Assembly: GCF_001194135.2 (NCBI RefSeq)
Contig: NC_068983.1
Span: 124,107,350 to 124,143,019 of the forward strand
Length of the DNA: 35,670 nucleotides
Origin: Octopus bimaculoides
Taxonomy: Eukaryota
Direction of reading: 5' to 3'
The position numbers were made by a program, and so were the translations under genes. This document shows positions 1 through 22,249 of this stretch, piece by piece; the stretch's first letter is position 1, and each line of letters opens with the position of its first letter. The notes under the pieces were generated by a model. That model searched no databases. It was not told where the DNA came from and was given only the letters and a program-made list of their open reading frames with translations.

Positions 1-62
1 GGGTTAGGGATAGGGTTAGGGTTAGGGATAGGGTTAGGGTTAGGGTTAGGGTTAGGGTTAGG
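1..62 (+). repeat. Telomere-type (TTAGGG)n array with ATAGGG variants, internal to the family-A element
   Basis: About 10 hexamers read directly. The array is G-rich on the + strand and runs into the element terminus. Confidence 0.95.
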
Positions 63-133
63 ATCGACCACTCAAGACTAGCTAGCGCGGACGCGCGACT
101 GCGCGTTCGGATCCGTGCTGCTTTAGTAGTCCC
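1..133. mobile_element. End of family-A TTAGGG-carrying TIR element (Merlin/MULE-like MITE), cut by the window edge
   Basis: 61-133 matches the 73-nt terminus at 21643-21715 with 4 mismatches and is preceded by a TTAGGG/ATAGGG array, as in the 21406-21715 copy. The far end and TSD lie outside the window. Confidence 0.85.
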
Positions 134-227
134 TAAAACATATCCATTTTCCTAAAGTTATGAGGGGAAAAATCGGATTGTGTGAATTTTCCGAAAGTCC
201 TCTGCCCCCACCCCCTCAGAAAAAAAC

Positions 228-462
228 GGTAATTTTTCATATTAACACCCGCACGACTTTCACTAGGGTGTTAGGGTTAGGGTTTTAGGATCAGGGTTGG
301 GGTTTTAGGGTTAGGGTTAGGGTTAGTGTTAGGATTAGGGTTAGGGCTAGGGTTAGGGCTAGGGTTAGGGTTTAGGGTTAGGGTTAGTGTTAGGATTAGG
401 ATTAGGGCTAGGTTTAGGGTTAGGGTTAGGTAATCGTGCGGGTGTTAATCAGAAAAATTACC
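228..462. mobile_element. Family-B MITE: 29-bp TIRs enclosing a degenerate TTAGGG array
   Basis: TIR GGTAATTTTTCATATTAACACCCGCACGA (228-256) vs 434-462, 2 mismatches. Flanks aaaaaaac/gaaaagac are at best a decayed 8-bp TSD. A second copy is at 2423-2483. Confidence 0.85.
266..431 (+). repeat. Degenerate TTAGGG array (TTAGTG, TTAGGA, CTAGGG, TTTAGGG variants) with a higher-order duplication
   Basis: The variant order TTTAGGG..TTAGTG-TTAGGA..CTAGG occurs twice (about 304-352 and 371-412). Confidence 0.9.
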
Positions 463-1138
463 GAAAAGACTTTTTCTTTTTTTTTTTTTTGTAATCTTTG
501 ATGTTTAAAGCATTCAAATCCACAACCCGTGCACCAGGATCGAACTCAAAACTACATATACAGAAGTGGATTTGTTTACCATACAGCTATGACTGCAACA
601 TAAGGATATGTTCTCAATATTTGCAAATTTAATAATTAAAAAATGTTGCTTCATTCATGTTATAATTGGTAACAGAAGGTTATAAAAGAAAATACTATAC
701 TTATCTTTGATTGAACAGAAATAAATCCAGGTGACATGTTGCTTGCCATCTTGTAATTACTTATGAGTTCAAATCCCGCCGAGGTCAACTTGGTCTGTTC
801 ATCCTTCCAGGGTTGATAATGTTAATTATCCATCAAATATTGGGCTTGGTTTATATTCTTTGACTACCTTCTTGATATGAATGGAATTTATAACAAAAGT
901 CATTTTAACTTCTTTCTTTCAACTTTATTTTCATTTATTATTCCTTTTTTCTCTTTTTTCCCCAGAGTATTTCCAAATAATCATTTCCATCAAACAACGG
1001 AATATGAACAATAATTTATATCAATTTATTTTAGATCGATAATTTTTCAAATATATTTTAATCGCTTTCATTGAAGCTGGAAATTTCTTTTTTGTTTTCT
1101 TCATATTAAAAAAATATTTTGGTTTTCACACATTTAAG

Positions 1139-1278
1139 GAATAATTGAGCGTCGACAAGGAAATCATTCAGAAAGAAAATACTTGTTAAACAAGCGAATT
1201 AAAGAAATTATTCGAGAAGAAAAAAAATTAGAAAAGAGAACAATTAAGTTTGGGATATTAATTCCCCCAAAACAGTAA
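1139..1278 (+). CDS. Candidate terminal coding exon of an unidentified upstream gene (xIIERRQGNHSERKYLLNKRIKEIIREEKKLEKRTIKFGILIPPKQ*)
   Basis: T-rich tract plus ttaag acceptor at 1137-1138, open charged helical-looking frame, TAA at 1276-1278, AATAAA at 1286-1291. No family recognised and no upstream exon found. Confidence 0.25.
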
Positions 1279-2422
1279 TTCAGTCAATAAATAAACCATG
1301 AGATTTGTAGACAATTCACAAGAAACATTTTCAAGCATAATAAAAAATATATTTTAAAACTTATCCCAGCATTTTGGAGTGAGATCCTTTGACTTACGGG
1401 TTGAAAGAATGTTGTTGTAATGATTATAATAAATATTTTTAGACACTGCTGTAATATACCTTTCTCTGATAAATCATTTTTTCGTACTTCCTTTCCTATT
1501 CGTTTCGAAAGATATTGTTTCAGAATAAACATTGATAAAACTCACCCCATCTTAGATGTATTTCGAGTATTTTCCAAGTCAACAGAGTTTTGTCAAAGGC
1601 GCCAAAATCGTCAAGTATGTTTTCTTGAAAACATTTTACTCCGTTTAAGAAGAAATGTGTGAAGTAAATGAAAATTGTGACTTAGAAAGATTCTATAAAT
1701 TGTGAATAACATTGTTGCCAGGTACTTATTAATAAGAAAAACAAAACGGGAAAAGTAAATAGTAATAGTTATTATAAATAGTTGAAACACATCCATTACG
1801 TCGTGTTCAACTCAAAATTTGCAGACGACAATTCAAACTCTATAGTCAATAAATGCGCATTAAAATAAGTAGAAAAAATAGTGCCCGTTTAAGTTTAAAT
1901 AATTAATCAAAATTTTTCAAGACACAACGATTTTTTGTAAGAGAAAATTTATAACCTTCCTTAACATCAAACTTTTGGTTATTTTATTGGTCTTAAAAGT
2001 TGATTTAAGTTGAATATGAGCTGACACTTAAAACTCACTGAACCTGATTACACAAAGGTTGTAATTCGGTTCCCAATCGTCTGCGTCACCTCTTAACGCT
2101 CTGAGATGAATTAAATTATGATATTAGTTTATTTCTTTAGTTTGAAAAAATTAAATGAGTTTATATCATCATTTCTTCTAAATGGTCTTTTAACATTTAT
2201 AAGATTAATTATTTTTATAATTCTTGTATTTAAAAATTGTCCCGGTTATTACAAAATAAATCTTTGTAATAAAGACTGAAACCTTAGGATGAACGAGATG
2301 AGGTTACTTTCATGCAATTTCAACAAATATGAATTTGGATCAAATGGTTTCCGACTGGAGTCGAAACTAGATCGAAAACTCCGTTCAAACAGTAATTGAC
2401 AATTATACTAAGTAACAGATTT

Positions 2423-2483
2423 GGTAATTTTTCAGATTAACACTCGCACGATTTTCCCTAGGGTGTTAATCTGAAAAATTACC
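2423..2483. mobile_element. 61-bp family-B mini-element lacking the TTAGGG array
   Basis: Perfect 21-bp TIR GGTAATTTTTCAGATTAACAC and perfect 8-bp TSD ACAGATTT (2415-2422 and 2484-2491). Confidence 0.9.
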
Positions 2484-2836
2484 ACAGATTTTTCTCGAAG
2501 TGCTTTTTCGCTCCTTTAGTTTTCCACCAAGTTTACTGTGTTAAATACGAAAATCACCTTAATTTTATTCTAACAACAAAGATTTGCCTACTAATCACGA
2601 AAACACAATATTTATTGTAATTTCAGCTGCGTCATGTAGATACTATAGAATGCGTTTACTATGATATAACGAGAAGTCACGAATAATGTAAGAAAATTGT
2701 AACAACTATGGAGTTACCACGAATGAACAACCTCAATATGCTCACAAGTGAACATTGACCATCACTATCTTTTGTGTCTCTATTATCTTCTCCAATGAAG
2801 TTCGAAATGTAATCGCATCATAGCTTTATTCTAACA

Positions 2837-3056
2837 AAGGCAGCGAGTTGGCAGAATCATAAGCACGTCGGACAAAAGGCTTAGTGGCATTTCGTCTGTC
2901 ATTATGAGTTGAGTTAAAATTCCGCTGAAGACGACTTTGTCTTTTATCTTTTCAGGGTCGATAAAATAAGTACAAGTTGAGCACTGGGGTTGACGTAATC
3001 GACTAACCCCTTTCCCCCAAAACTTCAGGCCTTGTGTCTATAGTATAAAAGATTAC
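2837..3056 (+). mobile_element. tRNA-derived SINE, family 1, near full length
   Basis: Head GGCAGCGAGTTGGCAGAATC with a B-box-like GAGTTAAAATTCC. The body recurs at about 770-850, 5025-5150, 25745-26105 and 27717-27917. Confidence 0.75.
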
Positions 3057-3089
3057 TTTAGTCTAACTTCCCCACTTTCATTTCTCTCA

Positions 3090-4260
3090 GTTGCATGTCC
3101 TGACGGAGCCATTCACCCTACTTTTCTGACACAGATTCAGCCAGAAGAATCCAAATGATAGGCTAAATAGTACAACTTAAATGACATTTTGCATCCAATA
3201 TTTCTGTAACTTTCAAGTTGTTCTACAAATAAAAGCTTTGAATTCTCTGCTTCGTTGTTGTTCAGAAACTTGTTGACAACGTTCTTGAATGCATTAGTTC
3301 TCTTTGCAACCATTGTCATTTTCATATCCAGAGTTTTGCATGCAAACATCAGCTTCACCTGTGAATGCAATAAACACATCAACAACAATTTTGCGTCGAA
3401 CAACATCAGAAACATTGCTTGTATGCAAGCATAGGCTTCACAATCTAAGACTGCGCTGAATTGTTTCATCAGGCCATTTTACGTGGAAAGGAGGTAGAAG
3501 ATATTGTCAATGAATATAACATTGTGCTTTACATTTTATGTCAGGCAGGCTGCAGGGATGATCTTTTTAGCCATTCTCCTTTTATGCAATTTTTTTTATC
3601 TCCACAAGCAAGAGTGTTTAGTATATCCATCGAGCAATCCGAGCAAGAACTGGAATATTTGAAATCATTAGATATATCCCACATAGTTGTCATATTTTAC
3701 CTTTTTGAAGAAAACTTTTGTATTTTTGCATCTTTCAGATGTACAGAGTGAGCAACAGGTACACTTGTATACTGATTGTCATTGTAAAGTAGCACAATTT
3801 TCTGGCTTCTTGTACAGCCGTCAATGAACAAACGATTTTCATCAGGTTGGTCTCTAAAGCCAATCGATTCAAACAAGCCTCTTACATCAGTAGAAAAGTG
3901 TGGTTACTCCTCAGTGAATAGAAATGGACAAAATCTGCATGTTGTGTTCAGTATTTTAAAATTGTCACTTTTGCATCCAGTAGATTCCATTCTTTCAATC
4001 TGGACACCAGCAGCTCTCCACCATATTTAATGAGATTCAAGTCTTAAATCATCAAGCTCTTGCTGATCTACAAAGTAGGGTTCTTCACATGAGCATGCTC
4101 CTTGAACTTCTTCCCAATTTTCATTATGATCCCACATTTTTGATGTCAACTTCGTCTGTTGATTCATAAGTTTGTAAGAGGTAAATTTGGTTGGCACTGG
4201 AAGGGTGCCACACAATTCTTTACATAAATGTTAGAGGAAAAATATTGGAACAAGAAAACA
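3090..4260 (-). pseudogene. Decayed Chapaev3-type (CMC superfamily) DNA transposase
   Basis: Minus-strand frames, interrupted by stops and frameshifts, give in order: LPVP, EPYFVDQQELDDL, LLVSRLKEWNLL, RLFID, SVPVAHSVHLK, LLPPFHVK/GLMKQF, GCKMSFKLYYLAYHLD. This motif series matches Chapaev3 as recalled. Confidence 0.8.
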
Positions 4261-5024
4261 TCTGAACATAAAGACAACCCTTTTATTTTGTATGTACAAA
4301 AATTTACACCTTGGGACAATCAGTAGCCAGGTCTGGTGTGGAAGAGCAAAGTCGGAGTTAATCATACTTTGTGAAGGCATTCTTCACAGAAATCCAGCTG
4401 CACGGAGCTGGTCAAATACCGGTCAGCAGCAGAGGTGAACAGAGAGCTGCTGAGGACACGTCTGCATAGTTCAGCGGCTGCATCTCGAGTCCAAGATACA
4501 AGAGAACTCTGCTGCTGCTAGTTTTCTGCGCATGCGCATCAGGGACCATTCGGCAGGCCTTCCAGAAGGTTCCAACCCTGCGCATGAGTGCTAGAGACCC
4601 TCAAAATGACGTCACTACAACTTCCTCATGTCCCCTTCCCAATTTTTTTGCCAAAGCCCCCCGTTTTCCTAAAAATCACCTAAAAAAGATTCTGGGATCA
4701 ATGCATTCAACTAAAAATTCCTCATGGCAATGCCCCAGCATGGCTACAGTCCAATGACTGAAACAAAAAAAAAAATGACTGAAAAATATAACCGTGGGGC
4801 TTTTGTCCAGATCCCACTGACTAAACATCATTCCCTATCGAATATGGTTATTTTAATTGAAAGATTAGTAGACACTCCGGCCTACTAAGATTGTGTGGGT
4901 TTCATAAAACTCAAGGCACAGAATTTCAAGCATGAATCACGTGCTATATGATAGGATAATGTATATAACTAAGTAAATAATACACACTTATACTTAAGAT
5001 GTTTTCTTTTAGTTGTTAAATTTC

Positions 5025-5150
5025 TCTGACTTTGCATTTCGTCCTTTTGGAGTCGATAAATTAAGTACCAGTCGCGTACTGGGGTCAATATAATCAACTA
5101 GCTCCCTCCCCCAAAAATTTTGGGCCTTGTGCCTAGTATAGAAAAGAAAT
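5025..5150 (+). mobile_element. SINE family 1, 3' part
   Basis: GACTTTGCATTTCGTCCTTTTGGAGTCGATAAATTAAGTACCAG, collinear with 2930-3050. Confidence 0.7.
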
Positions 5151-5384
5151 TTCTCCAATAATGACAGCACACTGATCTCCGTTTACAGCAGTGGTTGTCA
5201 ACCATTTTAAGGCAATGGACCCCTTTTGTTCCTCTTTTACTCTACTGGACCTCCATAACCGTTTGATGTATAAAAGGAATCCCACTGTATTTTTATTGTT
5301 AAATATCATTAGGAATTATATAAAAAGATTAAAATATTTTGTGTGTTGTAGAAGTATAAAGCAAAGGTATTGGTCTCTTGTCAT

Positions 5385-8140
5385 TGCCTCTGTGAGGCCC
5401 AATGTTTGAAGGTCGTGCTTCACCACCTCATCCCATGTCTTCTGGAGTCTACCTCTTCCACATGTTCCCTTCACACAGCTGTCCTCATCCATATACACCA
5501 TACATGATCATACCAGCGCAGTTGTCTCTCTTGTACACCACATCTAATGCTTCTTATGTCCAACATTTCTTTCAGCACGCTTACATTGTCATGTGTGCAC
5601 ACTGTCATTACACATTCAGTGGATCATACAAGCTTCCTTTCTTTCAAGACTATGTATGGCCCAACAGTCATGGCCCATGTTTCACTGCTGTGTAGCATGG
5701 CTGTTTGCATGCATGCATCATAGTCTATCTTTCACTCTGAGCGAGAGGCCCTTTGTTACAGGTAGAGGTAGAGGCTTTCTTATTCTAGTGGCAACACTCT
5801 CAGAGCATCCACCCCTACTACAGACTTGGTTACCTAGGTAGCAGGAGCTATCAACTACTTCTAGTTTCTCACCCTGGCCTGTGATGGAATCTGTTTTCTG
5901 AACATCTTTGGTGTTTATTGGCCCTCTGCATTTGCCACACACAAAAACTATCATCCCAGTTAACCTTACTTTGATATTGCTGCACCTCTTGTGTCCAGTC
6001 TTCACTGGGTTCATCTTATGGAGTTTCTACCTACACCTTTTCTACAAATCAAGCAGGGTCATCTACCTGAAGAGGTTTCTGATTTGTCCACTTTCCTACT
6101 TACTAGGACATTGGTTTTTGGTAGATTGACTCTTAAGGCCCTTCAATTCTAGACCTTGCTTCCGCACCTGAAATTTCTTCTCTAGTTCTGGGAGTGATTC
6201 AGATTTGAGATCAAGGTCATCAACATAGAGGAGTTCCCAGGGGCAGCCTGTCTTGAATTCCTGTCATTGCCTGGAGGACTATGATGAATAAGAGGGGGCT
6301 GAGGACTGATCCTTGGTGAACCCCTACTTTTACCTGGAATTTTTTACTATACTTATTGCCAACCCTCACCTTACTGACAGCATCCCTGTACAGCTCTTAC
6401 TAACCACTCTTCTATCCCTAGTTTCTGCATTGCCCACCAGATAAGGGATAGGGGGACCCTGTCAAGGGTTTCTCCAAGTCAACAAAAGTCAAGTCCAGGG
6501 GTTTATCTTTGGCTAGGTATTTCTCCTGCGGTTGCCTTACCAGAAATATAGCATCAGTGGTGCTTCTACCTGGCACAAAACCAAACTGCATCTTAACTAG
6601 GCTAACTCTCTCCCTAATTAGTTGGGCTATGACCCTCTCCATGACCTTCATCACTAGATCCAGCAATCTGATACCCCTATAGTTATTTCTATCTAAAGCA
6701 TCACCTTTATCTTTGTAGCAGTTGACCGTGGTGCTGCTACACCAGTCATTGGGTATAACTCCTTTGTGAACTACCTGATTTACAATACAGGTGACTAGAC
6801 TATGACCCACACCACAGATATTTCAAGCATCTCAGCAGTGATTCCTGATGGGCTGGAGGCTTTCCCCGTCTTCATACCCTTAATTGCTTTATCTACCAAA
6901 GAACTGTCAATTCGAATAGCTGGTCCCCCTGTTAAGTCAACATTTAGAAAACTCTCTTTCTCCCATTCATTCTTTTCATTTAACAACCTTTCATAGTGGT
7001 ATTTCCAAGTCTCTTTGCAGCATCATTAAATGCAAGTGAGCCGTCGTCCATGTGGACACATTTCTCCCCTATGACATCATGATTCTCTCACACACTGTTT
7101 AGCAATATGAAACACTTCAAGTCTCTGATCCTCACGACGCTGAACATTGGCAAATTTTTTTCTTATCTGCTTCCCCTCTGGCTAAATAAACTTGTCTCCT
7201 CACTTCCCTTCTGGTAATCTGATAAGTTCCCTGCTACTACCACACTTCCATGCTTGTTTCGTTTCCCTAATGGCCCTGTCAACTAGATTGTTCCACCATC
7301 ATGTTATCTTAGGTCGAGGGGCCCTTGCACTAGTGACAGATCTGGTCAGCAGCTCTCAACAAGTTGTCCTGTAGAAACCTCCAGTTGTCCTCCACATTAT
7401 GTGATACTATATCCTCCTATTTTTCGTCAAACGCTTCAAGTAATATATCTCTAAATCTTTGTCCATTCAGAGGATCTTTAAGCTTCCAGACCCCTCTTTC
7501 CTATGCCGGTCATCTTCTGGGCAGCTATTTAGCCCTGATCCTGAAGTTGCTACCTACTAGCCTATGTTGTGGGGTGCATTTTTTACCTGCGAAAGTTTTA
7601 GCATTTATAAGTAGCCATCTTTCCCGTTTGCAGGTGAGAATGTAGTGAATCTGATTAGTGTACCCACCAGACTGGTAGGTGAACAGGTAACTAGTAGGTT
7701 TCCTGAAGTTAGTATTACAGATCATCAGATCATTTGCATAACAGAACTCCAGCAGCCTGGTTCCCTCCTCATTGTGGGAACCAAATCCATTGCCACCATG
7801 TACGCTCCTGGATGTCGAACAGGCCCGTTGAAGTCGCCAGCCACAAAGAGAAGGTCCCTATCATTCGTTGGCGAAGTAGTCTGCGAGAGGGTGTCATAGA
7901 ATTGGTCTTTCTGTTCATCAGGTAGCCCTGGCTGAGGGGCATAGGCCGAGATAATAGTTGCTAATCCATGTTGCAGCACTAATCTAAGCTTAAGTATTCG
8001 ATCACATACTCTGACTACCTCGATTACCATATCAACCCATTTCACCACAAGGAGTATACCCATGCCTCCAACCCCATCAGTGTTCCCTACCCAGAAAATC
8101 TTATACCTATGTTCTTTGCCTGTGAGGAACCTAGCAGAAC
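5385..8140 (-). mobile_element. 5'-truncated, frameshifted RTE-clade LINE (APE endonuclease plus reverse transcriptase)
   Basis: Endonuclease motifs SAYAPQ and GDFNG. RT motifs NYRGIRLL, QFGFVPGRSTTDAIF, FVDLEK, GVHQGSVLSPLLF, LLYVDDL. C-terminal GRGRLQKTW. Boundaries approximate. Confidence 0.92.
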
Positions 8141-8415
8141 TACTCTTGAAAAGAAGACCAGTAAATTTGTGGAGAGAGGTTTAGTCAATTTCATTGACCT
8201 TAGTAATTGATTGATACTTATTTTACTGAACAAGAATGGATGAAAGGCAAAGTTGACCACAGCAATATTTGAACTCAAAACCTGAAGAGCCAGAAGAAAT
8301 GTTGCTCAGAATTTTGTACAATGCACTGTTTCAGTCATTGGACTGCAGCACTGCCTTGAAGGTTCTTAGTAAAATGAATTGAACGCAGTAATAACTTTTA
8401 AGTCTGGTACTTATT

Positions 8416-8945
8416 CTAAGCATTCCTGTGACACCGCAATTCTTTCTCACACATTGTCTTGCAATCCGAAATACACCAGCCACAAATTTGGTCTGTGGCG
8501 CTCAGTAAGCTGTCACACAGGAATTTCCAGTTACAAGTCTGCAGCTCTTCCTCCCTCTCATCAAATTTCTCAATGAAGATGTCCCTAAATCTCTGACCAT
8601 GTGATGGGTTCTTAAGCTTCCAAATTCTTTTCTGGACTGATCTGCTGCTTAGCATCCTTCTGACCTCGAGTCTTATGTCACTGATGACTAGTCTATGCTT
8701 GGCAGGTGGGGTACATTTTTCACCAGGGAGGGTCTTTGTATTTAAAAGCAACCATGCACGCCGCTGTCTGGTGAAGATGAAATCAATCTGGCTAGCAGAG
8801 TCACCTGATTGATAGGTTATCAGGTGGCTGGCTTCCTGAAGTTGCTGTTGCAGATTAATAGGTTGCTTGCATCACAGAACTCCATTAGCCCAGTTCCCTC
8901 TTCGCTTTGGGAACCAATCTCCAGCCAAGAGATGTTTATATTTCA
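8416..8945 (-). mobile_element. Second, independent RTE endonuclease-region fragment
   Basis: NTKTLPGEKCTP..HRLVISD repeats the protein segment already encoded at 7525-7725, so this is a separate insertion. Confidence 0.8.
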
Positions 8946-10048: not shown

Positions 10049-10065
10049 AACAATCAGAGAAAAAA

Positions 10066-10253: not shown

Positions 10254-10378
10254 TTAATATGCTTCACCAGGAGCTCTAATATCATCAATCTTCAAGATCA
10301 TACGAACTAACTGCGTAGCCAACATTATCTGTTGTTTCTTGGCAGTAAGTGTTTCCAACACATGTTGCTCTTTCATAT
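10254..10378 (-). CDS. CCT5: CCT5 exon 10 (125 nt; [11 protein letters not shown]...[11 protein letters not shown])
   Basis: Acceptor atgcag, TAA at 10256-10254. Confidence 0.96.
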
Positions 10379-13300
10379 CTGCATTTGGAAGAAAAAGAAA
10401 TATTCACATGAGATAAAGTTACATATAATTCATGAAATTACTGTTTCATTACATTACCATAAACAGTTTATTTTATAAGTGGTATATATTGAAATGACAG
10501 TATACTATATTTAAAAACAGTATGTGTAAGTGGGGAGTTGAAATAGAAAAACTACAAAGTCTACTTGAAGTACATCCTTCAGTCCTATGCCGAAAGTGCA
10601 ACTGTAACCAGGTTAAAAACTGTAATACATATAATACTGCTGTTTGGGATTGAAAATTGGAACAAAGCACTCTTCTGTGTGAGTTTAACTGTATTTTAGG
10701 AAGAACTCCCTGTCGAAAGATCTCTTGCTTGCTGATTTTTTTTGTTTTTATCAAACAAATTCCGAGGAATTTTCCTTTTTCTATTTCTGAGTATAATGGT
10801 AGTTAATACCTCAAGCAGAGAGTTAAAATTTGGAGATATTTTAAAAGTGGGGCCTCTCAGCATATTGGTAAGTGTAATTATAATAATAAGAGGACTAATT
10901 TGTTGGGCTTTAGAAAACCTCTGAATGGAGGAGATGAAGGCATATACTGGAATGCTTTTTTGAATGGAAGTTGTGCAGCTTCCAAATTACAGAAACGAAC
11001 TGGAACACCAAGTCGGATCTGAGACAAGAAATCAATGCTCAAGAATAGATGTCTTATAAATATACATGTAATCCACTTTCAACCTATTTGGGCAGGTGAA
11101 AGTGAAAAAACAACAAGTAAAAACTATTTTCACAACATATACCAATGATCATTATATTATTCTTTTATTTGTTTCAGCCATGCTGGAGCACCGCCTTTAT
11201 TCGAACAGATCGACCCCAAGACTTATTCTTTGTAAGCCTAGTACTTATTCAAGCAAACACTGCAAAGTGGTTGGTGTTAGGAAGGGCATCCATGTTGTAA
11301 GAAGTATTGTAAAACAGGTGGTGTTATGAAGGGCATTTGGCTGGAAAATACTGCCTAAAAAGTCCAACTGAAACTTTGCCAGCAAGGAAAAGTAGGGACA
11401 AAAAAAAAAAAAAAAAAAAAAAAGTTACTGCTTTGTCCTCAATATGTATGAGAGAGAGAGAACACCTCTTAGTTTGTTTTTTTTAAATTAACCTATTAAA
11501 TTGAGAGGATTAAAATATTTGTCAACCAAAACTATTACAAAGAATTTAAATGACAAACATTTGGAACAGTTATTGAGTTTTACCTGAAGTTCCTTTACTT
11601 AAGCAATCAATTCCTAGTCTACAATTTTTCTCATTTAATTGTCTTGACTTGACTTCTGATAATGTTCGAATGGATGACAGTCCACTATTTTCTGCCAAAG
11701 CCAATGGAATTGATTCTAATGCTTCAGCAAAAGCTCTCATAGCATATTGTTCAATAGTTGAAATCTGAAAGGGCAATTTTTACTATCAATATCATAAGTG
11801 CCATAAGAATCTAATATAGAAACAGTTAAAAAAATAGAAGAAAAAGTTTAATAAAGACAAATTTATTATATAAAAACAAATTAAGGTAAATGAAAAATAA
11901 TGCTGAATTAAAATTTTCTGAGAAAACTTATAACACATTACAAAACATTAACTCTAAGAACACATAATTAACATTGCTTGAGCATGAATATAAGTAACAA
12001 ATATTTGTTTATCAACTTATGATATTGCTTGGTACTATAGTTTTACAAAAACAGGAACCATTTAGCTGTTTTATAACACTAAGTTATTTTTAATAAATAG
12101 TAAACAGAAAAATAAATTACTTTGTCAGTCATCTGCTCCACTGCCAATGAACAAGAAATTTCAGCTGCTCCACCACCATAAACAATGCGATTATCTTTCA
12201 AAATATTGCGAATGACACACAATGCATCATGAAGACTCCTCTTTGCTTCTTCAATGATCTTAAGTTAAAAAGTAAAATTACAATTTATTTTATAAGTATT
12301 CGTCAAAATCAGTCCATCATCAATTATTACAATGTTAATGATATATATATATATATATATATATATCTCATCATCATCATCATCATCATCATATATGTAT
12401 AAATATTTTGCTTTTGTAAATCATCTTTAACTCAAAGGTAAAGCTATAAATAATAGCATAGAGGGAAACAAAGTTGACGGCTGTTGGTAGGACATGAACC
12501 TACATCTATAAATATGATTGATGAGCTAATCACTATACAAAGCAATACTTTAAATTTTCACAATCTATTTTAGAAGTTTTGCTCTTAGCTAAATATNNNN
12601 NNNNNNCGAAAACTGCAACAAACTACAGCTGGTGAATGTGTAGTGTATATTAGCCAAAATCCCCACCCTCATGTGCCTACAAAACAGTTATTTCAGTTTT
12701 CCCAGTAGTGCAGGGAGAAAAAAAAATATTGCAAAACCCCAATCCATCAAATGTACCCATTTTAAAATTTACTTTTGTATGCAAACAAATATATGCTTAG
12801 AAGTGATACTGGATCAAATGCCTCCAGGTGCAAAAAGTAAGTATGAACAAAAAACACGTTAATGTATATCACAAAGTCTTGTTATGATGAATACATTACT
12901 TGAAGATAAAAAAAGCTTACAAATTACTGTTATATTTGAGGGAAGTTTAGACAAAATATTTATTATGGCCAAATAATATAGAAATTTCTCAGAAAACTTA
13001 CCATCTTATTTCCACCTCTTATAAAAATAGTGACAGCTTTGGAATTGTGGCAGTCTTCAATAACCAACATACGATCTTTAGTAGTCCCAAATGTTAGCTC
13101 ACGGACAATTCCAGCCTTCCCAAGTTTATCAGTTGTTAACTCAGAAAAGCGGGGTACAATACGACCTCCAGTGGCAATAGCAATGAGCTGGAAAGAAATT
13201 ACAATTAATTTATTCAGTATCTTAGTAACTAAATGCTTTTTTTAAGAACTGTTCTTTCATCTCAGTATAATACAGGTAGGACAGTTTTTGGAAATGTGAA

Positions 13301-16300
13301 TCAGTGGAGCAATTAGTTGTATAGATCCTCTTCTCTACTTACACACACATCAGAAGAATCAGTTTAAACTTGAGATAACATTTAGAAGACTAGAGTAAAC
13401 TGCCATCTTTCTTTCTATTCACAAAAAGACCTTATAAAGTTGACTTTGATGAAATCTGAACTCAGAATGTAAAAAGCTCAAATAGGACACCAACAATTCT
13501 GCCAATCTGCCAACTTTATGACAATTGTAATACTAAGAAACATAGTACCCTCAGAGCAACCACTAAGAGGCTAGTAGTTGGTAGATCTTGGGTCTGAAGG
13601 GATAATCAATCAATTCTTTCATCTTTGCAAGAAGAGTTATATTGATCAGTTTCCTCTTGTATTTCAATTATTCTGAGATACCTTTAGATGTAATTATAGC
13701 ATTGCTCTGCTAAATTTTAGAAGCAGTATAAAAATGGGTGCATCTTTTTTTTTTATATATATTTTTTAAGTATAGAAAGCCACTGTCACAAATACCAAAA
13801 CCATTTTGACACTTTCATGACTAGAGTGGTACAGTTATTTTTTAATTGAACTTAAGAACTATTTGAGTGAAAATTTATAAAGTTTCAAGCAAAGGTACTT
13901 TGACAGGGTAGTGTAGTTACATAATGGCCAGTGAAAGTGAAAAAGTCATAAAAAGGTTAAAAGATACAGACAAGACAGTAAATGAGAGAGAATAGTAGAT
14001 TGCGAGAAAGGTAATATGAAGGAAGAGTTATTCAAAGAGCAAGAAAGTGAGAGAAGTGGTTGGTGTAATAGTAGTGGAAGGAATGGAAAAAAGACAGCAA
14101 TGCAAGCTAATCAATTGTTCCCATGTTTGGGAACAATTGCACTTAGTTTTATTATAAATATGTTAAAATTTGTTTCAAGTACAATATCAAGCTTAAGTGC
14201 TGTAAGTAGAAATAAATCATAAAATGTTACTCAATGGAGACAATAACTGACTTCTTGATGTCAAGATTGTTTACGTAGATATAGAAAAAGGGTTAAAAAA
14301 TGCCAACAACTCACTTCAATTTCTGGTCCTCCAACCCAACGGACAGCAGGCAGTTCTTTTTGAAGCAACAGGTGGTTAGCTTCATCATCAAATCCCCACT
14401 GGCAGATTACCAAGTTACAACCAGTACATTTTACCTAAAATACAAAAAAGTTACGTATTAAGTAATAGTAGTCTGATTAAATAAAGTGAAGCTATAACAC
14501 TTCACAAACTCCATATAATGTCCACAAGTAAAACATCACACATATCAGATTAGTTTTAAATAAGACATCCAACTAACATGATACAAAGATAAAACTTGAT
14601 TTATGTTAGCACACTAAACATTCAAATAGTTGAATACTATAAGAATTATACTTCTAAATGGTTTAAAGAATGACCAAGACATTGGCCAAAAACGCAATGT
14701 CAATCTTAAACTAATAAAAACTACTAACCAATGTCAGAAATTACCATAAAAATGGATTACTAAACATTTCAAGAAATAGGTGTGACTGGTGTGTGTCATA
14801 CACAAGACATGATATAAACTGAGAAGCAGAATCGATTTAATGAAAACATTTTGGAATATTTACACATGCATTCACTCATTTAAATAGATAAAATGCAAAT
14901 TATTGATCCACAATCTCACTCTAAGATTGCATACACTCCTATCAAACATGCACACATAGAGCCTCTATGTGCATACATGATCCCACTTTCTACTACTTCA
15001 TTGAAGTTTAACTACAATTTGTTGAGTAATGGAAGAAACAGCAAATCATTTAGTGGAAAACACCTCAATGTATGAGAAGCATCTGCACAAACTTCCTTCT
15101 CAAACACAGCAGATACAAATTTACCCACTTGCCATTTAATGACTAGCATAACAGTATCATTGTAAATTGATAGAAGGGCAAAGATGCATAGAAAGAGGAA
15201 TCTACAGAGGTAACAAACTGCTGAACCAGCTTATGAAAGTTTCAGAGAGTTATTGCAAAAGCAATCAGGAACAGGAAGTAGCTTGTTTTGTGCCAGACAA
15301 CTAGAAAAGAGGCTGAGAGTAAACCTCTACATCTAGCATTCATCAACCTAGAGGTTTTTGATAGGGTCCCATGTTGTGATCTGATGGTAGTGAAGGAAGT
15401 GAGGGAGTAGATGACTGGTTTGTGAGGACCATACAAGCCATATACAGAGGTGCAGTCAGTATGTACATTGGGGGTCCATCAGGATCCAGTTTTCAGCTCT
15501 CTCCTGTTTATTGTTTTAAAACCATGACAGAGAAGTTTAAGGCTGGTTGTCTGAAGGAACTCCTGTTCACTAACAACTTTGTCTAAGAGCAGAATGTGTA
15601 GAAAAAATGCAAACACAGGAATAAAGCCTTACAGTAAACATAGTACAGACTAATGAAATGAATCTAGGTGTCATGTGTAAGGCAGAGTAAAAAAGGTGAA
15701 GACAGTCTGGAAAGATGAGGAAAAAGTGGGGCAGCAAAGAACAATATTAAGTAGCCAGAAGAGAAGCTAGACAACAAATTTGCATAGCAGAGAAAAAAGA
15801 TAAAATACTTTGTGATGAGAGGAGCAGAGGTGTGAGGGTGTCCTGGATTACAAAGGAGTGTTCAAAATGACAGTTATGCACTAACATTCAATGACACAGA
15901 AAAAAATAGGCTTGGAAATGTTACTGAGTGAAGTTATTGAATATGGAAAATGTATCATAGGAAGAGGGACTAAACCAAATACACACATAAATGGGAATCA
16001 GCTACCGAAGTGAACAGCTTCAGTGTTCAAATGACCATTAAGGACATGAAGGCAGAGAAAGCTGTAGCTCTATAAGGGATACTTGTTGAGATGCTGAAAA
16101 TATCTCGAGGAGTAGGAACTCAAGTTTGTCACACACAAAGTCAACCAGTTAGTTGAGAGGGGTGTCAAATACAATAACTGGCAGAGCAGTACCATCATCT
16201 AATGCTAAAAAGGCAAATGACAAAGAAGCAATTACAAAAGCATAAGAGTGATGGATCAAGTTATGAAAGTAATTGAAATGATTAGAAAGAAAACCAATTT

Positions 16301-19300
16301 AGATGAGAGGTGGTTTAGATTTGTTTCAAGTTGGGGTACTACAATGCTTTCTGCCAAAGGTAACTACGAGAAGTTTTTAGCAGAGTCTACTATGATACCT
16401 TGCATTCATGGATGTGCAGAAGGCCTGAAAACTAGGTATAAATGAATGGCTTGTCAGAGTGATGAAGGCCATAGAGATGCTGTTAGAAAGTGAAAGTGAC
16501 AATTCAGTATAGAATTTAGTGTGCAAGTATGTGTACATCTAGTCTTGGTTCTCAGCCTACTCCTGTTTATTATGTTCCTCTAAGTAATAACACAGATTTT
16601 AAGACCAGTTGCTTAGTCCTGCAAACAAAACCTAGAATGAAGTGGCCTCAGAAAATACTTAGCAAAGACTAAAGTTTTAGTAAGTAGGAAAGAAAATAGT
16701 ACTGCTGTCATCTGGGAAATGGATGTGTCATATAGAAAAGGAGTAAGTAAGAATTTCATATAATGTATCAAATGTAAACTATGGGTGCACAACAAGTATA
16801 GTGGAATTACAAGTAGGCTAGCAAAGAAAAAAGACCTTGCATGCAGCAGATGGGCAGACGTTGTTAGCAATCAGCAAACAAGTAAAATAAATTTACTTCC
16901 AATATTCAGAATAGTTGATAGCTTCCATTAAGTGATCTAATCAGCAGTGGAGGAGAATGCTTTAAAAGTACAAAGGAGATGACAAAAGAATCCCAGAAGT
17001 AGTGAGACACTGTATTGGAAAACACCTGTATACCCTATGCAAGCACAAAAAAGTGAATATAAAAAATATTAACCAACAAAAATATTTAAGCTGAATACCA
17101 ACAACACTGATCACATCAGTCTGGAAGTATCTAATATAGATTGTAGAAAAATACCAAAGCACCGACCACATAAAAAAAAAAGTGTTGATAATCATTGTTT
17201 AACAGTAAAATTATAATAAAAATATGTAAGTAAATGTAATTAAAATGTATAATACACAAAAATTAAAGTGAAGATAAAAATGTTATTGACCTGTTAACAT
17301 TTACACAAGCTAAAATTTGAGAACAGTTTATATAAATTAAAAATATATTAATGAATAATATTAATATTATTTACCTGGTCAACCATTTCATTAAACTTAT
17401 GAGTTTCATAGTCTCTTAATTTTTTGTAATCTTCAACAGATGAAACATCTAACTTATGCTTAGTTTTTGGTTTTGGTGGTTCAAATGGGCAGGTAAGTAT
17501 GGCAATTTTTGCATCTTTCACTTGCTGTAATAAAAATTATAGACTCATAAAATTGAAATTTGGTGTAATCTCAACAAAATACACCTAAGTTATTGTATTT
17601 GAAAGATGTTTTTTACAACAATTTTCTTTGTTGTATAAAGTTGCTGATTTAATACATAAATATATATAAATACACATCTACTTCAGTTTTCAGATGAAAA
17701 GAATTTTAATCATTATTTCATGTTTGTTCTAAAATAACTTGGATGTTTGGTCAATCAGCTATTAATCTTGTGAGTTGTTTCAATTTCTAAGATAGTCTAC
17801 TTGTTTTAGAAAACAGACTGCATAAAAATTGGAATTACTAAACAGAACTTGTTAAAAGATCAACAGACTTACTTTGGGCATTTGTGGATGACTCATATCC
17901 TTATCCACAACAACTCCTTTAACTAAAACAGTGTCTTCAAGCTTTCCACCAACTTTACCATCAACTTTTATCAATTCAAAGTTAATATCTTTTCTTTCCA
18001 AGTCAGCAACTGCCAGAACAGCATCTACAGCAATTGTAGCCATTTGGCGGTGACATTTGTTAATACTGGAAGAAAGAAAATATTGTTCTTATCAATCATA
18101 TCAACAAAAACTGAAATTCATAACAGTATAAACCTATATTATGAATTCATTAGAGAGAACTGATAATAGAACACTCACAATCACTTCAAATGCTAAACTT
18201 TGACACCGCTGAGGATCTGATGATTACACAACTGCAACAAACACTGCATCTCTCAAAGAGTTCCCTTCCACTTCAGAACCAGAAAATACTTTAGAGCCCC
18301 CAACAACCACTAACTCTCTACAAAGTTAGACGAGCTCCACATCTGGGACAATGCTGCTGATACACTAACAAATATCTTAAGTGCATCAAAAAAAGTTACC
18401 TGATTAATAAGTATAAAGTTGCCCACCAGCACACCTCAATGCACAAATGATCCAATTGCCTCTCCTCACACTCATACTGTTCCCATAACCCATAGTAACC
18501 ACTAAGTCCAGCCCTTTTGCTCTAGAATATCAACAGCAAAGATTCTGTAGCTTGCACGTTTTTTGTGTCCTGCAGCTACTGATTTGAAACTACTCAAAAG
18601 CTATGTTGATGACATTAACATCACTGGCCTTGAAGGCTGTGATCGCTTCTCCTCCAGGACACTAACTGAATATTAGAAAAGGTTAAGGTTCTTTCAATAG
18701 TGTCAAGTAATCTTTAATATTCAAATTTTCATAAAACTTACATTTTAGAACCTAAAGTAGTCATTGCCAGTTGAATTAAAGGTTCTTTGTTGTTAGGTCC
18801 AGTTTCAAAAACTTCACTTATGTCATGAAGATGATCAACAGCAATTGTAGCAGCCATTTCAAAACCATCAGCAATACGGATAGGATGAATTCCTTTGTCT
18901 AGCAATTTCTCAGCTTGTTCCAACAAAGCACCAGCCAATACTATAAAAAAAAAAAAAGGTGGAAAAGATATATGGAGAGGTTGTCGAGTGCAAAGTGAAT
19001 GGCACTGCAGAGATAAGTGTGAAAGAAGTTGAGAAAGCAACAAGAGTAATAAAGAGTGGAAAAGCAAGAGACCCAACAGGAGTTGAAGGAGACATAAAAA
19101 ACAGCAAGAAGTCGGGATGTTAAGAATATGATTGATGGATATGTCAGCTCCCTGGGCTGTGGTTAGAAGAGTATAATTAAGTTATTGGAACAGAGTAGGA
19201 GAATCTTGGAAAGATAAAGAAAATGAATTTGATGAAATAAAGTCTGGATTTATGATAAAAAGAACAAATGCAGATAGTTTATTTTAAGTACAGGGACATG

Positions 19301-22249
19301 AGCACTGAAAGAGAAACAAAACATTAGTTTAATTAGAGTACCGATGACATATATTCTTACCAACAACACCAGTAGTTCCATCACCAATCTCATCATCCTG
19401 GGATTTGGAGAGTTGTACAAGTAATTTTGCAATCTGATGTTTTACATCCATCATGGTTAGGATAGTTGCACCATCATTAGTTAAGGTTACATCACCATCT
19501 GAACTGACCAACATTTTATCTAGCCCCTTAGGGCCCAGGGATGTTCTCAATATGTCAGCAACATTTTTCGCAGCCAAAATATGCGACTGAAAAAATAAAT
19601 AAAAATCATTACTAATACTAGTTCACTTAAACTTTTAATTCACTAGACACTAGACAAACACATTCAAATCTGAAATGATTAACTTGTAAGGTCAAAATGT
19701 TTTACACATAACTGATCACAATATTTAGTTTGGAGTTGAAGCCTCACTGAAGTCAACTTTACCTTATTCTTCAGTTCCTAAAATGTGCACTTGCAACATT
19801 ACTCTACACTCCTCCACATTAAAAACTGGTTTGGTTGATTATCTCAATAATTCAGATTTTCAAGTAATGACATATTGGAAAAATCAGCAATAAAACTGTA
19901 TCATTTGTACAGTGCAATATGTACTCTGATCAATAGAGGAATTGAAGAAATAAGCTAAATTATAATGAAACTTAACCCTTTTGCTTCATAGTTGTTGAAA
20001 TACAATAACTTTGTTTCAAGTAATTTCAAAAATACTGAAGGTTTGAGTTTAGATAATTTTAGAATGGGAAGTTTGTATCATAGAACAAAGGACAGTCTCA
20101 GGTGCAAGATGTAGCAAATATTACCTTAATTTCAAACCTTCCAAATCTAAGTCATCATCATCATCGTTTAACGTCTGCTTTTCATGCTGGCATGGGTTGG
20201 ATGGTGTGACTGAGGACTGGTGAGCCAGATGGCTGCACCAGGCTCCAATCTGATCTGGCAGAGTTTCTGCAACTGGATGCCTTTCCTAATGCCAACCAAT
20301 GTTCCACTGGCATGGGTGCCAGTCAGGCAGTGCTGTCATTGGCTACATCAGCGAATTTGATTTTGATTACACTTGCCTCAACAGGTTTTCACAAGCAATG
20401 CATAAGTAGGCTGGTTACACCGCTGGCATAGGCCATGGATTATGGTCTCACTTGGCTTGCCGGGTCTTCTCAAGCACANNNNNNNNNNCACTTGGCTTGC
20501 CGGGTCTTCTCAAGCACAGCATATTTCCAAAGGTCGTGCTTCACCACCTCATCCCAGGTCTTCATGGGTCTACCTCTTCCACAGATTCTCTCAACTGCTA
20601 GGATGTGACACTTTTTCATACAGCTGTCCTCATCCATTTGCACCATATGTCCATACCAACGCAGTCGTCTCTCTTGCACACCACATCTGATGCTTCTTAA
20701 GTCCAACTTTTCTCTCAAGGTGCTTACACTTTGTCGTGTATGCACACTGACATTACACATCCAGCGGAGCATACTGGCTTCATTCCTTACAAGCTTACAT
20801 ATGTCCTCAGCAAAAGATAAAAGCAACACTCTTCAAATCAAACACTACGACTGTTTTCTTCTTCATTGGCATGGGTTGGACAGGTGCATTAACCAAAAAA
20901 CCCAGATGCAGCTGTGTCAGAAAAGATTCAAAATCTACAGCTTTTACTCCATTATTGCCTTTCTTAGTTTATGACTATAATGGCTACATTTTACCAACTT
21001 ATCAATACTTTTATCTTGCATGTGCTTAGTTGCACCAAATGAAGTGTAAAATTTCCACTTATTTTCTATCACCTTAGTTACAAACCTTCTATCAAGTCAA
21101 ATTTCTTTAATGATTTGCAGGGTTTTAGTGAACATTCATTTCAAATTTGTCTTATGTAATCAACAAGTTCCAAATTACAAAAGATAAAAAATTCAAAATG
21201 AACAACCTTACAGTTTTCAAGCAAAGCTTCTTAACTTGGAATTTCTCTCAGCAATTTTATCTGGTTTATTCACACCCAACTTCTCGCAACAGACCTCAAA
21301 AATGGCAACACTTTCACAAGTTTTCTCTATGCAGTTGCCTTAGAACTCGAGCATTATAAGTACAAAAACAACTAGTAGTTTTTTTATGTCGTTCTGTAAC
21401 AAATAGGTACTACTAAAGCAGCGCGGACCCGTCCGCGCTAGCTAGTCTTGAGTGGTCGATCCTAACCCTAACCCTAAACACGTATTCATTTGCACACGCA
21501 GGTTAGGATCGACCACTCACGACTAGCTAGCGCGGACGTGCGACTGCGCGTTCGGGTCCGCGCTGCTTTAGTAGTACCCCCTATCCCTAACCCTAACCCG
21601 CGTGTGCAAATGAATACGTGTTTAGGGTTAGGGTTAGGGTTAGGATCGACCACTCACGACTAGCTAGCGCGGACGCGCGACTGCGCGTTCGGGTCCGCGC
21701 TGCTTTAGTAGTACCTAACAAATATTTTAACAAGATGAGGAATTATAAATTATATATTGTCATAGGCGGACTCTAGATTGCTCTAGAAAATGTGTTCCCT
21801 ACAAAAGTAGTATCACAACTGAAAATGAAAATCTTTCGAATAACTAATTATTTTAACAGAACCGTATAAGCTGCTGTAGAATAACGTTTTTTGCTGTCCT
21901 CAAAGTTCTTCACATTACTGCTCTAGTAGCAGGATTTTCTTTTCATGATTTTAAAAAGAGTATCATAGTACTACAAATAGTCTATCGATATCAAGAGGCA
22001 TTCTTTCGATAAATAATTTGATGTTAAATTTAATTTGTGTCAAAATATTTTCGTCGCTTTGAAACCGCGACCTGACAAGACTTCGTGATGAGTTAAAAAT
22101 TTCATTCAATTTAACAAATAAATCGACCAGAGCGTAAAAGAACTTCGACCAAATCAAACTGTGCAGCAAAGCTATCTTGTCATAGGATGGAAAGTAGCAG
22201 TTAAATTCTTCTTTCAGATAACATCTATAAATTAAAAAAGGGTTGCGTT

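What the first reader, a model, noticed from the sequence alone, without database searches (positions are those of the whole stretch)
1..21715. Two unrelated Merlin-like MITE families both carry telomeric TTAGGG repeats and seed interstitial telomere sequence
Seen: every TTAGGG array in the window lies inside one of two short TIR elements, family A (1-133, 21406-21715; 9-bp TSD) or family B (228-462; a 61-bp derivative at 2423-2483 has an 8-bp TSD). They share only the GGTA terminus and the hexamer. Established, from memory: Merlin (IS1016/IS1595-related) elements have 5'-GG termini (GGNRM) and 8-9-bp TSDs; MULEs make about 9-bp TSDs; TTAGGG is the mollusc telomere repeat. Inference: cut-and-paste elements are distributing G-quadruplex-prone, shelterin-bindable repeats into genes and intergenic DNA, either as transposase subterminal sites or as telomere mimicry.
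Basis: partly seen in the sequence, partly recalled or inferred. Interest (0 to 1): 0.82.

Follow-up and report, generated by a model that had tools for sequence, protein, structure and literature searches.

The report
Octopus MITEs carrying telomere-repeat arrays
Two small, unrelated cut-and-paste transposon families in an octopus genome carry short runs of the telomere repeat TTAGGG as inherited cargo and so scatter it inside chromosomes, but a repeat-free relative that also moved suggests the repeat is a passenger, not a working part.

Summary
Every tandem TTAGGG array in the window lies inside a terminal-inverted-repeat element: family A (1-133; 21406-21715, perfect 9-bp duplication) or family B (228-462; array-less 61-bp derivative at 2423-2483, perfect 8-bp duplication). 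The host is Octopus bimaculoides or a very close relative, and TTAGGG is the only experimentally determined cephalopod telomere motif.

In family A the arrays were inherited: all four arms share the junction TTAGG|ATCGACC, and a variant unit (ATAGGG) occurs at both loci.

New evidence comes from the orthologous O. sinensis locus. It holds a 662-bp family-A relative with homologous arms, a 9-bp duplication and no telomeric repeats. The window keeps that element's empty site (23850-23858). A-type elements are therefore mobile, and the array is dispensable.

"Merlin-like" fits (5'-GG ends, 8-9-bp duplications, Merlin abundant in this species) but is unproven, because no transposase partner could be reached. 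The ideas of transposase-binding sites or telomere mimicry are not supported.

Genome-wide copy number and the share of interstitial arrays carried by these elements could not be measured. Neither 10-N gap touches the elements, and gene order is colinear across both.

Verdict: real, modestly novel, a new variant of repeat-bearing MITEs.

The parts
1..62 (+). Family A copy 1: (TTAGGG)n array of at least 10.3 units with two ATAGGG variant units. Cut by the window start.
63..133 (+). Family A copy 1: right arm (71 nt), with a diverged terminus GTAGTCCC. It has 4 mismatches in 76 against the reference arm.
220..227 (.). Degenerate 8-bp target duplication of the long family B copy (AAAAAAAC). Its partner is at 463-470 (GAAAAGAC); 6/8 match.
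228..256 (+). Family B long copy: left 29-nt TIR, GGTAATTTTTCATATTAACACCCGCACGA.
264..431 (+). Family B internal one-directional degenerate TTAGGG array (about 26 units, 80% matches). It contains a 61-nt higher-order duplication (301-363 vs 362-424, 56/63).
434..462 (-). Family B long copy: right 29-nt TIR, 27/29 complementary to the left TIR.
2415..2491 (+). Family B 61-bp deletion derivative (2423-2483; 21/21 TIRs, no array) with its perfect 8-bp duplications ACAGATTT (2415-2422, 2484-2491). The deletion joins the two GGGTGTTA repeats that lie at 265-272 and 438-445 in the long copy.
21397..21405 (.). Left copy of the 9-bp target duplication TAACAAATA of the family A composite. The right copy is at 21716-21724.
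21406..21578 (+). Family A unit 1 (173 bp). Parts in order: arm 21406-21460, carrying a 16-bp deletion of its internal hairpin loop; CCCTAA array 21461-21477; 22-bp core ACACGTATTCATTTGCACACGC 21478-21499; array remnant AGGTTAGG 21500-21507; arm 21508-21578. Folds as a near-perfect hairpin (-82.3 kcal/mol, z = -18).
21579..21715 (+). Family A unit 2, lacking one arm. Parts in order: CCCTAA stub with a CCCTAT variant 21579-21599; inverted core 21600-21621; TTAGGG x3.8 at 21622-21644; arm 21645-21715.
23850..23858 (.). Empty target site CAAAATTAG. O. sinensis carries a 662-bp array-less family-A relative here (L002 8703-9364), flanked by CCAAATTAG/CAAAATTAG.
10260..23235 (-). Context: CCT5 (T-complex protein 1 epsilon) gene, 10 exon matches. 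The family A composite lies in intron 1, between exon 1 (23235-23095) and exon 2 (19592-19362).

Best explanation
Families A and B are two independent non-autonomous TIR DNA transposons (MITEs) of Octopus bimaculoides. They belong to the 8-9-bp-TSD class and are most likely mobilised in trans by Merlin-type transposases.

Each family picked up a telomeric-hexamer microsatellite in its internal region at some point in its history. From then on the array was copied to every new insertion as passive cargo. It expands, contracts and degenerates by slippage, unequal exchange and point mutation.

Transposition therefore plants short interstitial telomere-like arrays in introns and intergenic DNA as a by-product. 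These arrays supply the only canonical G-quadruplex motifs in this window.

Shown:
- TIR and TSD anatomy.
- Inheritance of the arrays within family A.
- Mobility of the A type, with a 9-bp TSD.
- Dispensability of the array for an A-type element.

Inferred:
- The Merlin assignment.
- Passive rather than functional status of the arrays.
- How the arrays were first acquired. Candidates are seeding at the TAGG|ATCGAC inner arm boundary by telomerase or slippage followed by palindromisation (A), and a one-sided insertion during break repair (B).
For: Structure:
- Perfect 9-bp and 8-bp TSDs, with 71-76-nt and 21-29-nt TIRs starting GGTA.
- An unbiased TIR+TSD scan finds only these two elements and none in shuffles.
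- No ORF with a transposase domain and no Rfam family in the window.

Inheritance of arrays in A:
- The array-arm junction TTAGG|ATCGACC is identical in all four arms at two loci.
- The array-core junction is identical in both units.
- The ATAGGG variant is shared by the array at 1-62 and the stub at 21579-21599.

Family B:
- The 61-bp copy keeps the full left 29-nt TIR but lacks the inner 8 nt of the right TIR. It equals the long copy minus the segment between two GGGTGTTA repeats, so long gave rise to short.
- The array contains a 61-nt internal duplication. It therefore grew by duplication, not only by telomerase.

Mobility and dispensability:
- O. sinensis L002 8703-9364 has arms 64-71% identical to A. 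Homology ends exactly at GTCGATCCT.
- That element has a 9-bp TSD (8/9) and no TTAGGG. The window has the single-copy empty site.

Host and superfamily prior:
- The window's CCT5 is 496/496 identical to the O. bimaculoides entry.
- TTAGGG is the cephalopod telomere motif (PMC13218726).
- Merlin elements have TIRs with terminal 5'-GG and 8-9-bp TSDs, and 191 Merlin sequences are reported in O. bimaculoides (PMC8101967).
Against: - Only two loci per family were seen, and no other copy of either family could be retrieved from this genome.
- No autonomous partner was found, so the superfamily is unproven.
- Two unrelated families both carrying the same hexamer, 94 bp apart at 1-462, is more coincidence than a purely passive model predicts.
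- In family A the arrays are symmetric and abut the inner TIR boundary on both sides. That is also what subterminal binding sites would look like.
- The array-less O. sinensis relative is a diverged subfamily, so it shows dispensability for the A type in general, not for family A itself.
- The empty site of an array-bearing copy was not recovered. O. sinensis lacks a 516-bp block around the A composite, with no TSD at its edges.
Confidence: 0.7

Rival explanations
1. The TTAGGG arrays are functional modules. They could be subterminal binding sites for the transposase or a host Myb-type telomere protein, or telomere mimicry that protects or tethers the excised element. On this reading two families acquired them convergently under selection.
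For: - Two unrelated families carry the same hexamer.
- In family A the arrays are symmetric, inverted, and directly abut the inner TIR boundary on both sides.
- The G-strand always runs 5'->3' towards the nearest terminus in A and in B's right end.
- Oxytricha TBE transposons offer a precedent for telomere repeats inside TIRs (PMC4724952).
Against: - An A-type relative with homologous arms and a 9-bp TSD inserted without any telomeric repeat.
- Unit number varies from 1.3 to at least 10 among arms of one family.
- B's array is one-sided and 80% degenerate.
- The 61-bp B copy has perfect TIRs and TSD but no array.
Confidence: 0.1
2. The arrays are independent telomerase-mediated break-repair scars (classical short interstitial telomeric sequences). 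They happened to land inside pre-existing elements after those elements had inserted.
For: - This is the accepted origin of short ITS in vertebrates (PMC7215372, PMC9693754).
- Palindromic MITEs are plausible fragile sites.
- For family B only one array-bearing copy is seen, so in-situ acquisition cannot be excluded there.
Against: - In family A, four arms at two loci share the same junctions and a shared variant unit. Independent insertions would not reproduce these.
- The 61-bp B copy retains the first array unit (CTAGGGTGTTA) at its deletion junction. This implies that its progenitor already had the array.
Confidence: 0.07
3. Classification rival: family A is a MULE (Mutator-like) MITE rather than Merlin. 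Family B would belong to yet another 8-bp-TSD superfamily.
For: - From memory of the standard classifications (Wicker et al. 2007; Yuan and Wessler 2011), 9-bp TSDs and long (>70 nt) TIRs are typical of MULEs.
- A and B differ in TSD length and share no sequence.
Against: - Both begin 5'-GGTA, and both TSD lengths fall in the Merlin range.
- Merlin transposases are unusually numerous in O. bimaculoides (PMC8101967).
- B's GGTAA terminus does not fit hAT (YARNG) or P (CATG) termini (from memory).
Confidence: 0.25
4. Artefact: the arrays are assembly chimeras or a real subtelomere at a scaffold end. The 1.5-copy family A composite would be a mis-join of two alleles or flip-flop isomers.
For: - The window starts inside an array.
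- The assembly has unmerged overlaps: identical 30-mers flank the gap at 20479-20488.
- Palindromic repeats are hard to assemble.
Against: - TTAGGG on the + strand at the left end is the wrong polarity for a chromosome end.
- The arrays at 228-462 and 21406-21715 lie in gap-free sequence bounded by TIRs and TSDs.
- The locus is colinear with O. sinensis and with the CCT5 exon order.
- A mis-join could explain the composite's internal order but not the elements themselves.
Confidence: 0.04

Closest known systems
Merlin superfamily DNA transposons and their MITEs (IS1016/IS1595-related)
   Same: 5'-GG termini, 8- or 9-bp target duplications, and TIR lengths within the reported 24-462 bp. The host species is reported to be rich in Merlin transposases (PMC8101967).
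   Different: No DDE_Tnp_IS1595 partner with these TIRs was found. Internal telomeric arrays are not a described Merlin feature.
Tandem-repeat- or microsatellite-bearing MITEs of molluscs (pearl, DTC84; PMC3879986)
   Same: Short non-autonomous elements in which inverted-repeat 'cassette' flanks carry an internal tandem array of variable copy number, so transposition spreads the repeat.
   Different: Those elements carry family-specific core repeats plus a tetranucleotide microsatellite and have a putative AA target duplication. Here the repeat is the host's telomere hexamer and the TSDs are 8-9 bp.
Telomere-bearing elements (TBE) of Oxytricha (Tc1/mariner; PMC4724952)
   Same: Cut-and-paste transposons whose inverted repeats contain the host telomere repeat, with the C-rich strand reading 5'->3' inwards from each end.
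   Different: In TBEs the repeat is at the extreme termini, and the elements are autonomous, 4 kb long, Tc1/mariner type. Here the arrays lie 55-76 nt (A) or 32 nt (B) inside the termini of non-coding elements with 8-9-bp TSDs.
Short interstitial telomeric sequences inserted by telomerase at double-strand breaks (PMC7215372), and the proposal that mobile elements transpose telomeric repeats (PMC9693754, PMC6410037)
   Same: Short, variable TTAGGG runs at non-terminal sites. The reviews explicitly list transposition by mobile elements as a possible source.
   Different: Classical short ITS sit in unique DNA without TIRs or TSDs. Here the arrays are inside TIR/TSD-bounded elements with inherited junctions. 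This gives a sequence-level example of the proposed transposon route.

Membership tests
MITE (non-autonomous TIR DNA transposon) | Terminal inverted repeats | tested here: met
   Family A arms are 71-76 nt and 95-100% alike. Family B TIRs match 27/29 (long copy) and 21/21 (61-bp copy).
MITE (non-autonomous TIR DNA transposon) | Target site duplication of fixed length | tested here: met
   9/9 TAACAAATA (A), 8/8 ACAGATTT (B short), 6/8 (B long), and 8/9 for the O. sinensis relative.
MITE (non-autonomous TIR DNA transposon) | Small size and no coding capacity | tested here: met
   Sizes are 61, 173 and 235 bp. No transposase domain in the window's larger ORFs.
MITE (non-autonomous TIR DNA transposon) | Insertion polymorphism (filled versus empty site) | tested here: met
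   Shown for the A-type relative: filled in O. sinensis (L002 8703-9364), empty in the window (23850-23858). Not recovered for the array-bearing copies themselves.
MITE (non-autonomous TIR DNA transposon) | Many dispersed copies in the genome | not testable with these tools
   Two loci per family in the window. The O. bimaculoides genome is not in any searchable collection.
Merlin superfamily | TIR starts with 5'-GG | tested here: met
   GGTAC (A and the O. sinensis relative) and GGTAA (B). Criterion taken from PMC8101967.
Merlin superfamily | 8- or 9-bp TSD | tested here: met
   9 bp for A, 8 bp for B.
Merlin superfamily | Autonomous partner encoding a DDE_Tnp_IS1595 transposase with the same TIRs | not testable with these tools
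   None in the window and no access to the rest of the genome. The literature reports 191 Merlin sequences in O. bimaculoides.
Mutator-like elements (MULE) | 9-11-bp TSD and long TIRs | tested here: inconclusive
   Family A fits (9 bp, 76-nt arms). Family B does not (8 bp, 29-nt TIR). The criterion is from memory and the transposase was not testable.
hAT superfamily | 8-bp TSD with 5'-YARNG termini | tested here: not met
   B has an 8-bp TSD but a GGTAA terminus. A has a 9-bp TSD. The criterion is from memory.
Classical short ITS (telomerase break-repair scar) | Array inserted into unique DNA, no TIR or TSD, independent junction at each locus | tested here: not met
   All arrays lie inside TIR/TSD elements. 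The junctions are identical in the four A arms.
Oxytricha-type telomere-bearing elements | Telomere repeat at the extreme termini; Tc1/mariner transposase | tested here: not met
   The arrays are subterminal or internal and the termini are GGTA. Comparison from PMC4724952.
True telomere or subtelomere | C-rich strand 5' at a left chromosome end | tested here: not met
   The window starts with the G-rich strand, followed by a family A arm.

The most novel reading that the evidence does not exclude
Telomere-hexamer arrays were acquired convergently by at least two Merlin-type MITE families in octopus because they are useful to the element. They might recruit a telomere-binding Myb protein, or shield or tether the excised DNA. 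On this reading these MITEs are the main generator of interstitial telomere sequence and G-quadruplex sites across the octopus genome.
Probability: 0.1. Interest if true: 0.75.

Novelty: new variant of a known kind. Interest (0 to 1): 0.45.

Why it matters

This locus supplies a clean example in an animal:
- The arrays are bounded by TIRs and target duplications.
- Their junctions are inherited between copies.
- A related array-less element has a filled/empty site pair between two Octopus species.

This makes two questions directly testable in cephalopod genomes. How much interstitial TTAGGG (and G-quadruplex potential) is transposon-borne? When and how did the arrays enter the elements?

There is also a practical point. 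Telomere-motif-based scaffolding and telomere calling in cephalopod assemblies should expect MITE-borne internal arrays.

Tried and rejected
- Exact-pattern scans of metagenome contigs and genome contigs with conserved A and B stretches found nothing. Both caps are used.
- Protein route to more loci of the same genome. The RT ORF gave only 50-73% relatives, and one such locus (L004) shares no repeats with octopus.
- A first CCT5-exon search gave only anonymous fragments. Its best locus, L001, has no arrays or A/B homology.
- The O. bimaculoides protein P0212 is not on record for contigs. The missing left half of copy 1-133 could therefore not be fetched.
- Argonauta hians orthologue (L003): only exons align, so there is no outgroup for the 516-bp indel around the A composite.
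- Window 1-6174 has no alignable orthologue in the 35.5-kb O. sinensis locus. No empty sites were obtained for copy 1-133 or either B copy.
- No paralogous empty sites exist within the window.
- No extra degenerate A or B copies exist in the window.
- Rfam: no family.
- Pfam on 20 of the largest stop-to-stop ORFs: only a weak RVT_1 hit in the LINE, and no DNA transposase.
- Literature searches found no report of metazoan MITEs with internal TTAGGG arrays. Repbase and Dfam could not be consulted, so prior cataloguing is not excluded.
- Rejected: simple telomerase extension of gap-repair tails from the flanks, or of the excised element's ends. Either would put TTAGGG next to the left arm on the top strand, or outside the termini. 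That is the opposite of what is seen (inference).

Full report
OBSERVATION

The dimer TTAGGGTTAGGG occurs 14 times in the 35,670-base window and never in 100 shuffles. Tandem Repeats Finder and a mismatch-tolerant scan place every array in five stretches: 1-62, 264-430, 21461-21477, 21579-21599 and 21622-21644. All five lie inside two kinds of short element bounded by inverted termini.

An unbiased scan looked for an exact 12-nt inverted seed up to 1.2 kb apart with an exact 8- or 9-bp flanking duplication. It returns just two hits in the window: 2423-2483 (TSD ACAGATTT) and 21406-21715 (TSD TAACAAATA). It returns none in 20 shuffles and none in two orthologous loci. By base composition, such flank matches have probabilities of 3e-5 and 8e-6.

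GAPS (checked first, as asked)

The window has N runs at 12597-12606, 20479-20488 and 33893-34168.
- The 20479-20488 gap is flanked on both sides by the same 30-mer, which is the signature of an unmerged overlap.
- At 12597-12606 the O. sinensis orthologue has 1,106 bp. The gap may therefore hide about 1.1 kb, or mark a real indel.
- Across both gaps the ten CCT5 exon matches are in order and on one strand, and the O. sinensis locus is colinear.
- No gap is within 900 bp of an element, so none affects the finding.

HOST

A protein assembled from the window's CCT5 exons is identical at all 496 aligned residues to the Octopus bimaculoides UniProt entry. It is 98% identical to O. sinensis and 96% to Argonauta hians. 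TTAGGG is the only experimentally determined cephalopod telomere motif (PMC13218726). The label 'telomeric' is therefore justified.

ANATOMY OF FAMILY A

- The arm is 71 nt from ATCGACC to GTAGTACC. It is GC-rich (62% against 35% for the window) and has its own 9-bp internal hairpin stem.
- A full unit (21406-21578, 173 bp) reads arm, (CCCTAA)2.8, 22-bp core, AGGTTAGG, arm. As single-stranded DNA it folds into an almost perfect hairpin (-82.3 kcal/mol, z = -18).
- The left arm has lost 16 nt, which correspond to the loop of its internal hairpin.
- Directly after this unit comes a second one without a left arm: CCCTAT-CCCTAA-CCCTAA-CCC, the core inverted, (TTAGGG)3.8, arm. The 9-bp duplication flanks the whole 310 bp.
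- This composite is either a 'double element' made by aberrant repair or template switching, or an assembly join of two alleles or flip-flop isomers. Reads are needed to decide.
- The copy at 1-133 is a right half (at least 10 units plus arm) cut by the window start. Its polarity, with the G-strand at a left end, is wrong for a true telomere.

ARE THE FAMILY A ARRAYS CARGO OR LATER ADDITIONS?

All four arms, at two loci 21 kb apart, join the array at the same base (TTAGG|ATCGACC). Both units join the core identically. The variant unit ATAGGG is present both in the array at 1-62 and in the stub at 21579-21599. Independent insertions would not reproduce these details, so the array was in the common ancestor and moved with the element.

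ANATOMY OF FAMILY B

- The long copy (228-462) has 29-nt TIRs (27/29 complementary) and a one-directional, 80%-matching array of about 26 units. The array contains a 61-nt internal duplication (56/63), so it has grown by duplication and decayed in place.
- The 61-bp copy keeps the full left TIR region but lacks the inner 8 nt of the right TIR. It equals the long form with everything between two GGGTGTTA repeats removed. The direction is therefore long to short, and the progenitor already carried at least the first array unit.
- A and B share nothing beyond GGTA.

THE NEW EVIDENCE

The O. sinensis CCT5 protein led to the orthologous 35.5-kb locus (L002). It aligns colinearly with window 6175-32272 at 83-95% identity.

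The locus contains a 662-bp element at 8703-9364:
- Its termini are GGTACTG... and ...GATAGTACC.
- Its arms are 87% alike, and 64-71% identical to family A arms over their whole length.
- The homology stops exactly at GTCGATCCT, the point where family A's array begins.
- It is flanked by CTAATTTTG/CTAATTTGG, carries a nested SINE, and has no telomeric repeat.

The window aligns to both flanks of that element and has a single CAAAATTAG at 23850-23858. This filled/empty pair shows that A-type elements are mobile and make 9-bp duplications. It also shows that an A-type element can transpose without TTAGGG.

The converse test failed. O. sinensis lacks a 516-bp block around the window's A composite. 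The block's edges have no TSD and there is no usable outgroup. The first 6 kb of the window has no alignable orthologue in L002.

MECHANISM

The best reading is passive cargo. Each family acquired a telomeric microsatellite once, and transposition then spreads it.

Points in favour:
- The arrays are dispensable in the relative.
- The unit number ranges from 1.3 to at least 10 within family A.
- B's array is one-sided and degenerate.
- The 61-bp B copy has no array.

How the arrays arose is inference. In A and its relative the inner arm boundary reads (G)TAGG|ATCGAC. This offers a 4-nt telomeric seed for telomerase or slippage. One acquisition followed by copying between the inverted arms would give the observed symmetric CCCTAA-core-TTAGGG arrangement.

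Simple telomerase extension of repair tails from the flanks, or of the excised element's ends, predicts the opposite polarity or an external position, so it is rejected.

A functional role (binding sites, telomere mimicry) is not excluded, and the coincidence of two families is its best argument. I put it near 0.1.

CLASSIFICATION

Merlin elements are defined by TIRs of 24-462 bp with terminal 5'-GG, 8- or 9-bp TSDs and a DDE_Tnp_IS1595 transposase (PMC8101967). The first three features are met by both families. The fourth could not be tested. The same paper reports 191 Merlin sequences in O. bimaculoides, among the highest counts in Bilateria, which raises the prior. A MULE origin for family A (9-bp TSD, long TIRs) remains possible.

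COMPARISON WITH KNOWN THINGS

- Tandem-repeat-bearing MITEs are known in molluscs (pearl, DTC84; PMC3879986).
- Telomere repeats inside transposon TIRs are known in Oxytricha TBEs.
- Reviews list transposon-borne telomeric repeats as a possible ITS source.
- I found no report of metazoan MITEs with internal TTAGGG arrays. Repbase and Dfam could not be checked.

I rate this a new variant of a known kind.

LIMITS

- There are only two loci per family, and no other copy from this genome could be retrieved.
- No transposase partner was found.
- No occupancy or structure data are available.
- All four canonical G-quadruplex motifs of the window lie in these elements, but several short arrays have too few G-runs to form one.

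Noticed in passing
window 10260-23235 (minus strand): Complete CCT5 (T-complex protein 1 epsilon) gene with 10 exon matches. The start codon is at 23235 and the last exon is 10379-10260. It is 100% identical to the O. bimaculoides UniProt entry over the aligned part. That entry skips the exon at 14434-14312.
   Followed up: yes
window 20449-20518: The 10-N gap at 20479-20488 is flanked by two identical 30-mers (CACTTGGCTTGCCGGGTCTTCTCAAGCACA). It is probably an unmerged contig overlap, so about 40 bases here are likely artefactual.
   Followed up: partly
window 12597-12606 vs L002 21094-22199: O. sinensis has 1,106 bp of unique sequence exactly where the window has a 10-N gap. The gap length may be underestimated, or this is a species indel.
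   Followed up: partly
window 21334-21849 vs L002 about 11623: A 516-bp block is absent from O. sinensis. It consists of a 197-bp unique 'host' sequence plus the family A composite. Its edges have no TSD and at most 1 nt of microhomology. Whether it is a deletion or an insertion is unresolved.
   Followed up: partly
L002 32862-32936 (O. sinensis): A small degenerate palindrome: CCCTAA-like, 35-nt spacer, TTAGGG-like. It has the same polarity as the inside of family A. It aligns to the family A centre with score 23.5, against shuffles of 10 +/- 1.6 (max 18). It may be an old A-type relic without recognisable arms.
   Followed up: partly
window 5400-8870 and 20470-20830 (minus strand): Degenerate RTE-like LINE fragments, with a weak RVT_1 hit in 6421-6822. 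The first is shared with O. sinensis at the orthologous place. 5409-5470 and 20530-20591 are 89% alike.
   Followed up: partly
window 20152-20319 and 24394-24562: Two copies (83-92% complementary) of an abundant octopus repeat starting CATCATCATC...GTTTAACGTC lie in inverted orientation on either side of CCT5 exon 1. At least seven copies are in the O. sinensis locus.
   Followed up: no
window 2845-3009, 5056-5104, 25826-25874, 27725-27875, 35350-35611; L002 about 8850-9240: tRNA-like SINE families are scattered through the window. One such SINE is nested inside the O. sinensis family-A relative.
   Followed up: no
window 1-57, 294-322, 338-383 (+), 21577-21599 (-): These are the only four canonical G-quadruplex motifs (G3+N1-7 x4) in the whole window, and all lie in the two MITE families. 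The one in CCT5 intron 1 is on the sense strand of the gene.
   Followed up: partly
window 134-227: Only 94 bp of unique sequence separates the terminus of the family A half-copy from the family B long copy. Their arrays point the same way. Chance, a shared target preference and a local event cannot be told apart.
   Followed up: no
window 33893-34168: A third, 276-N assembly gap flanked by (TA)n. It was not mentioned in the finding.
   Followed up: no
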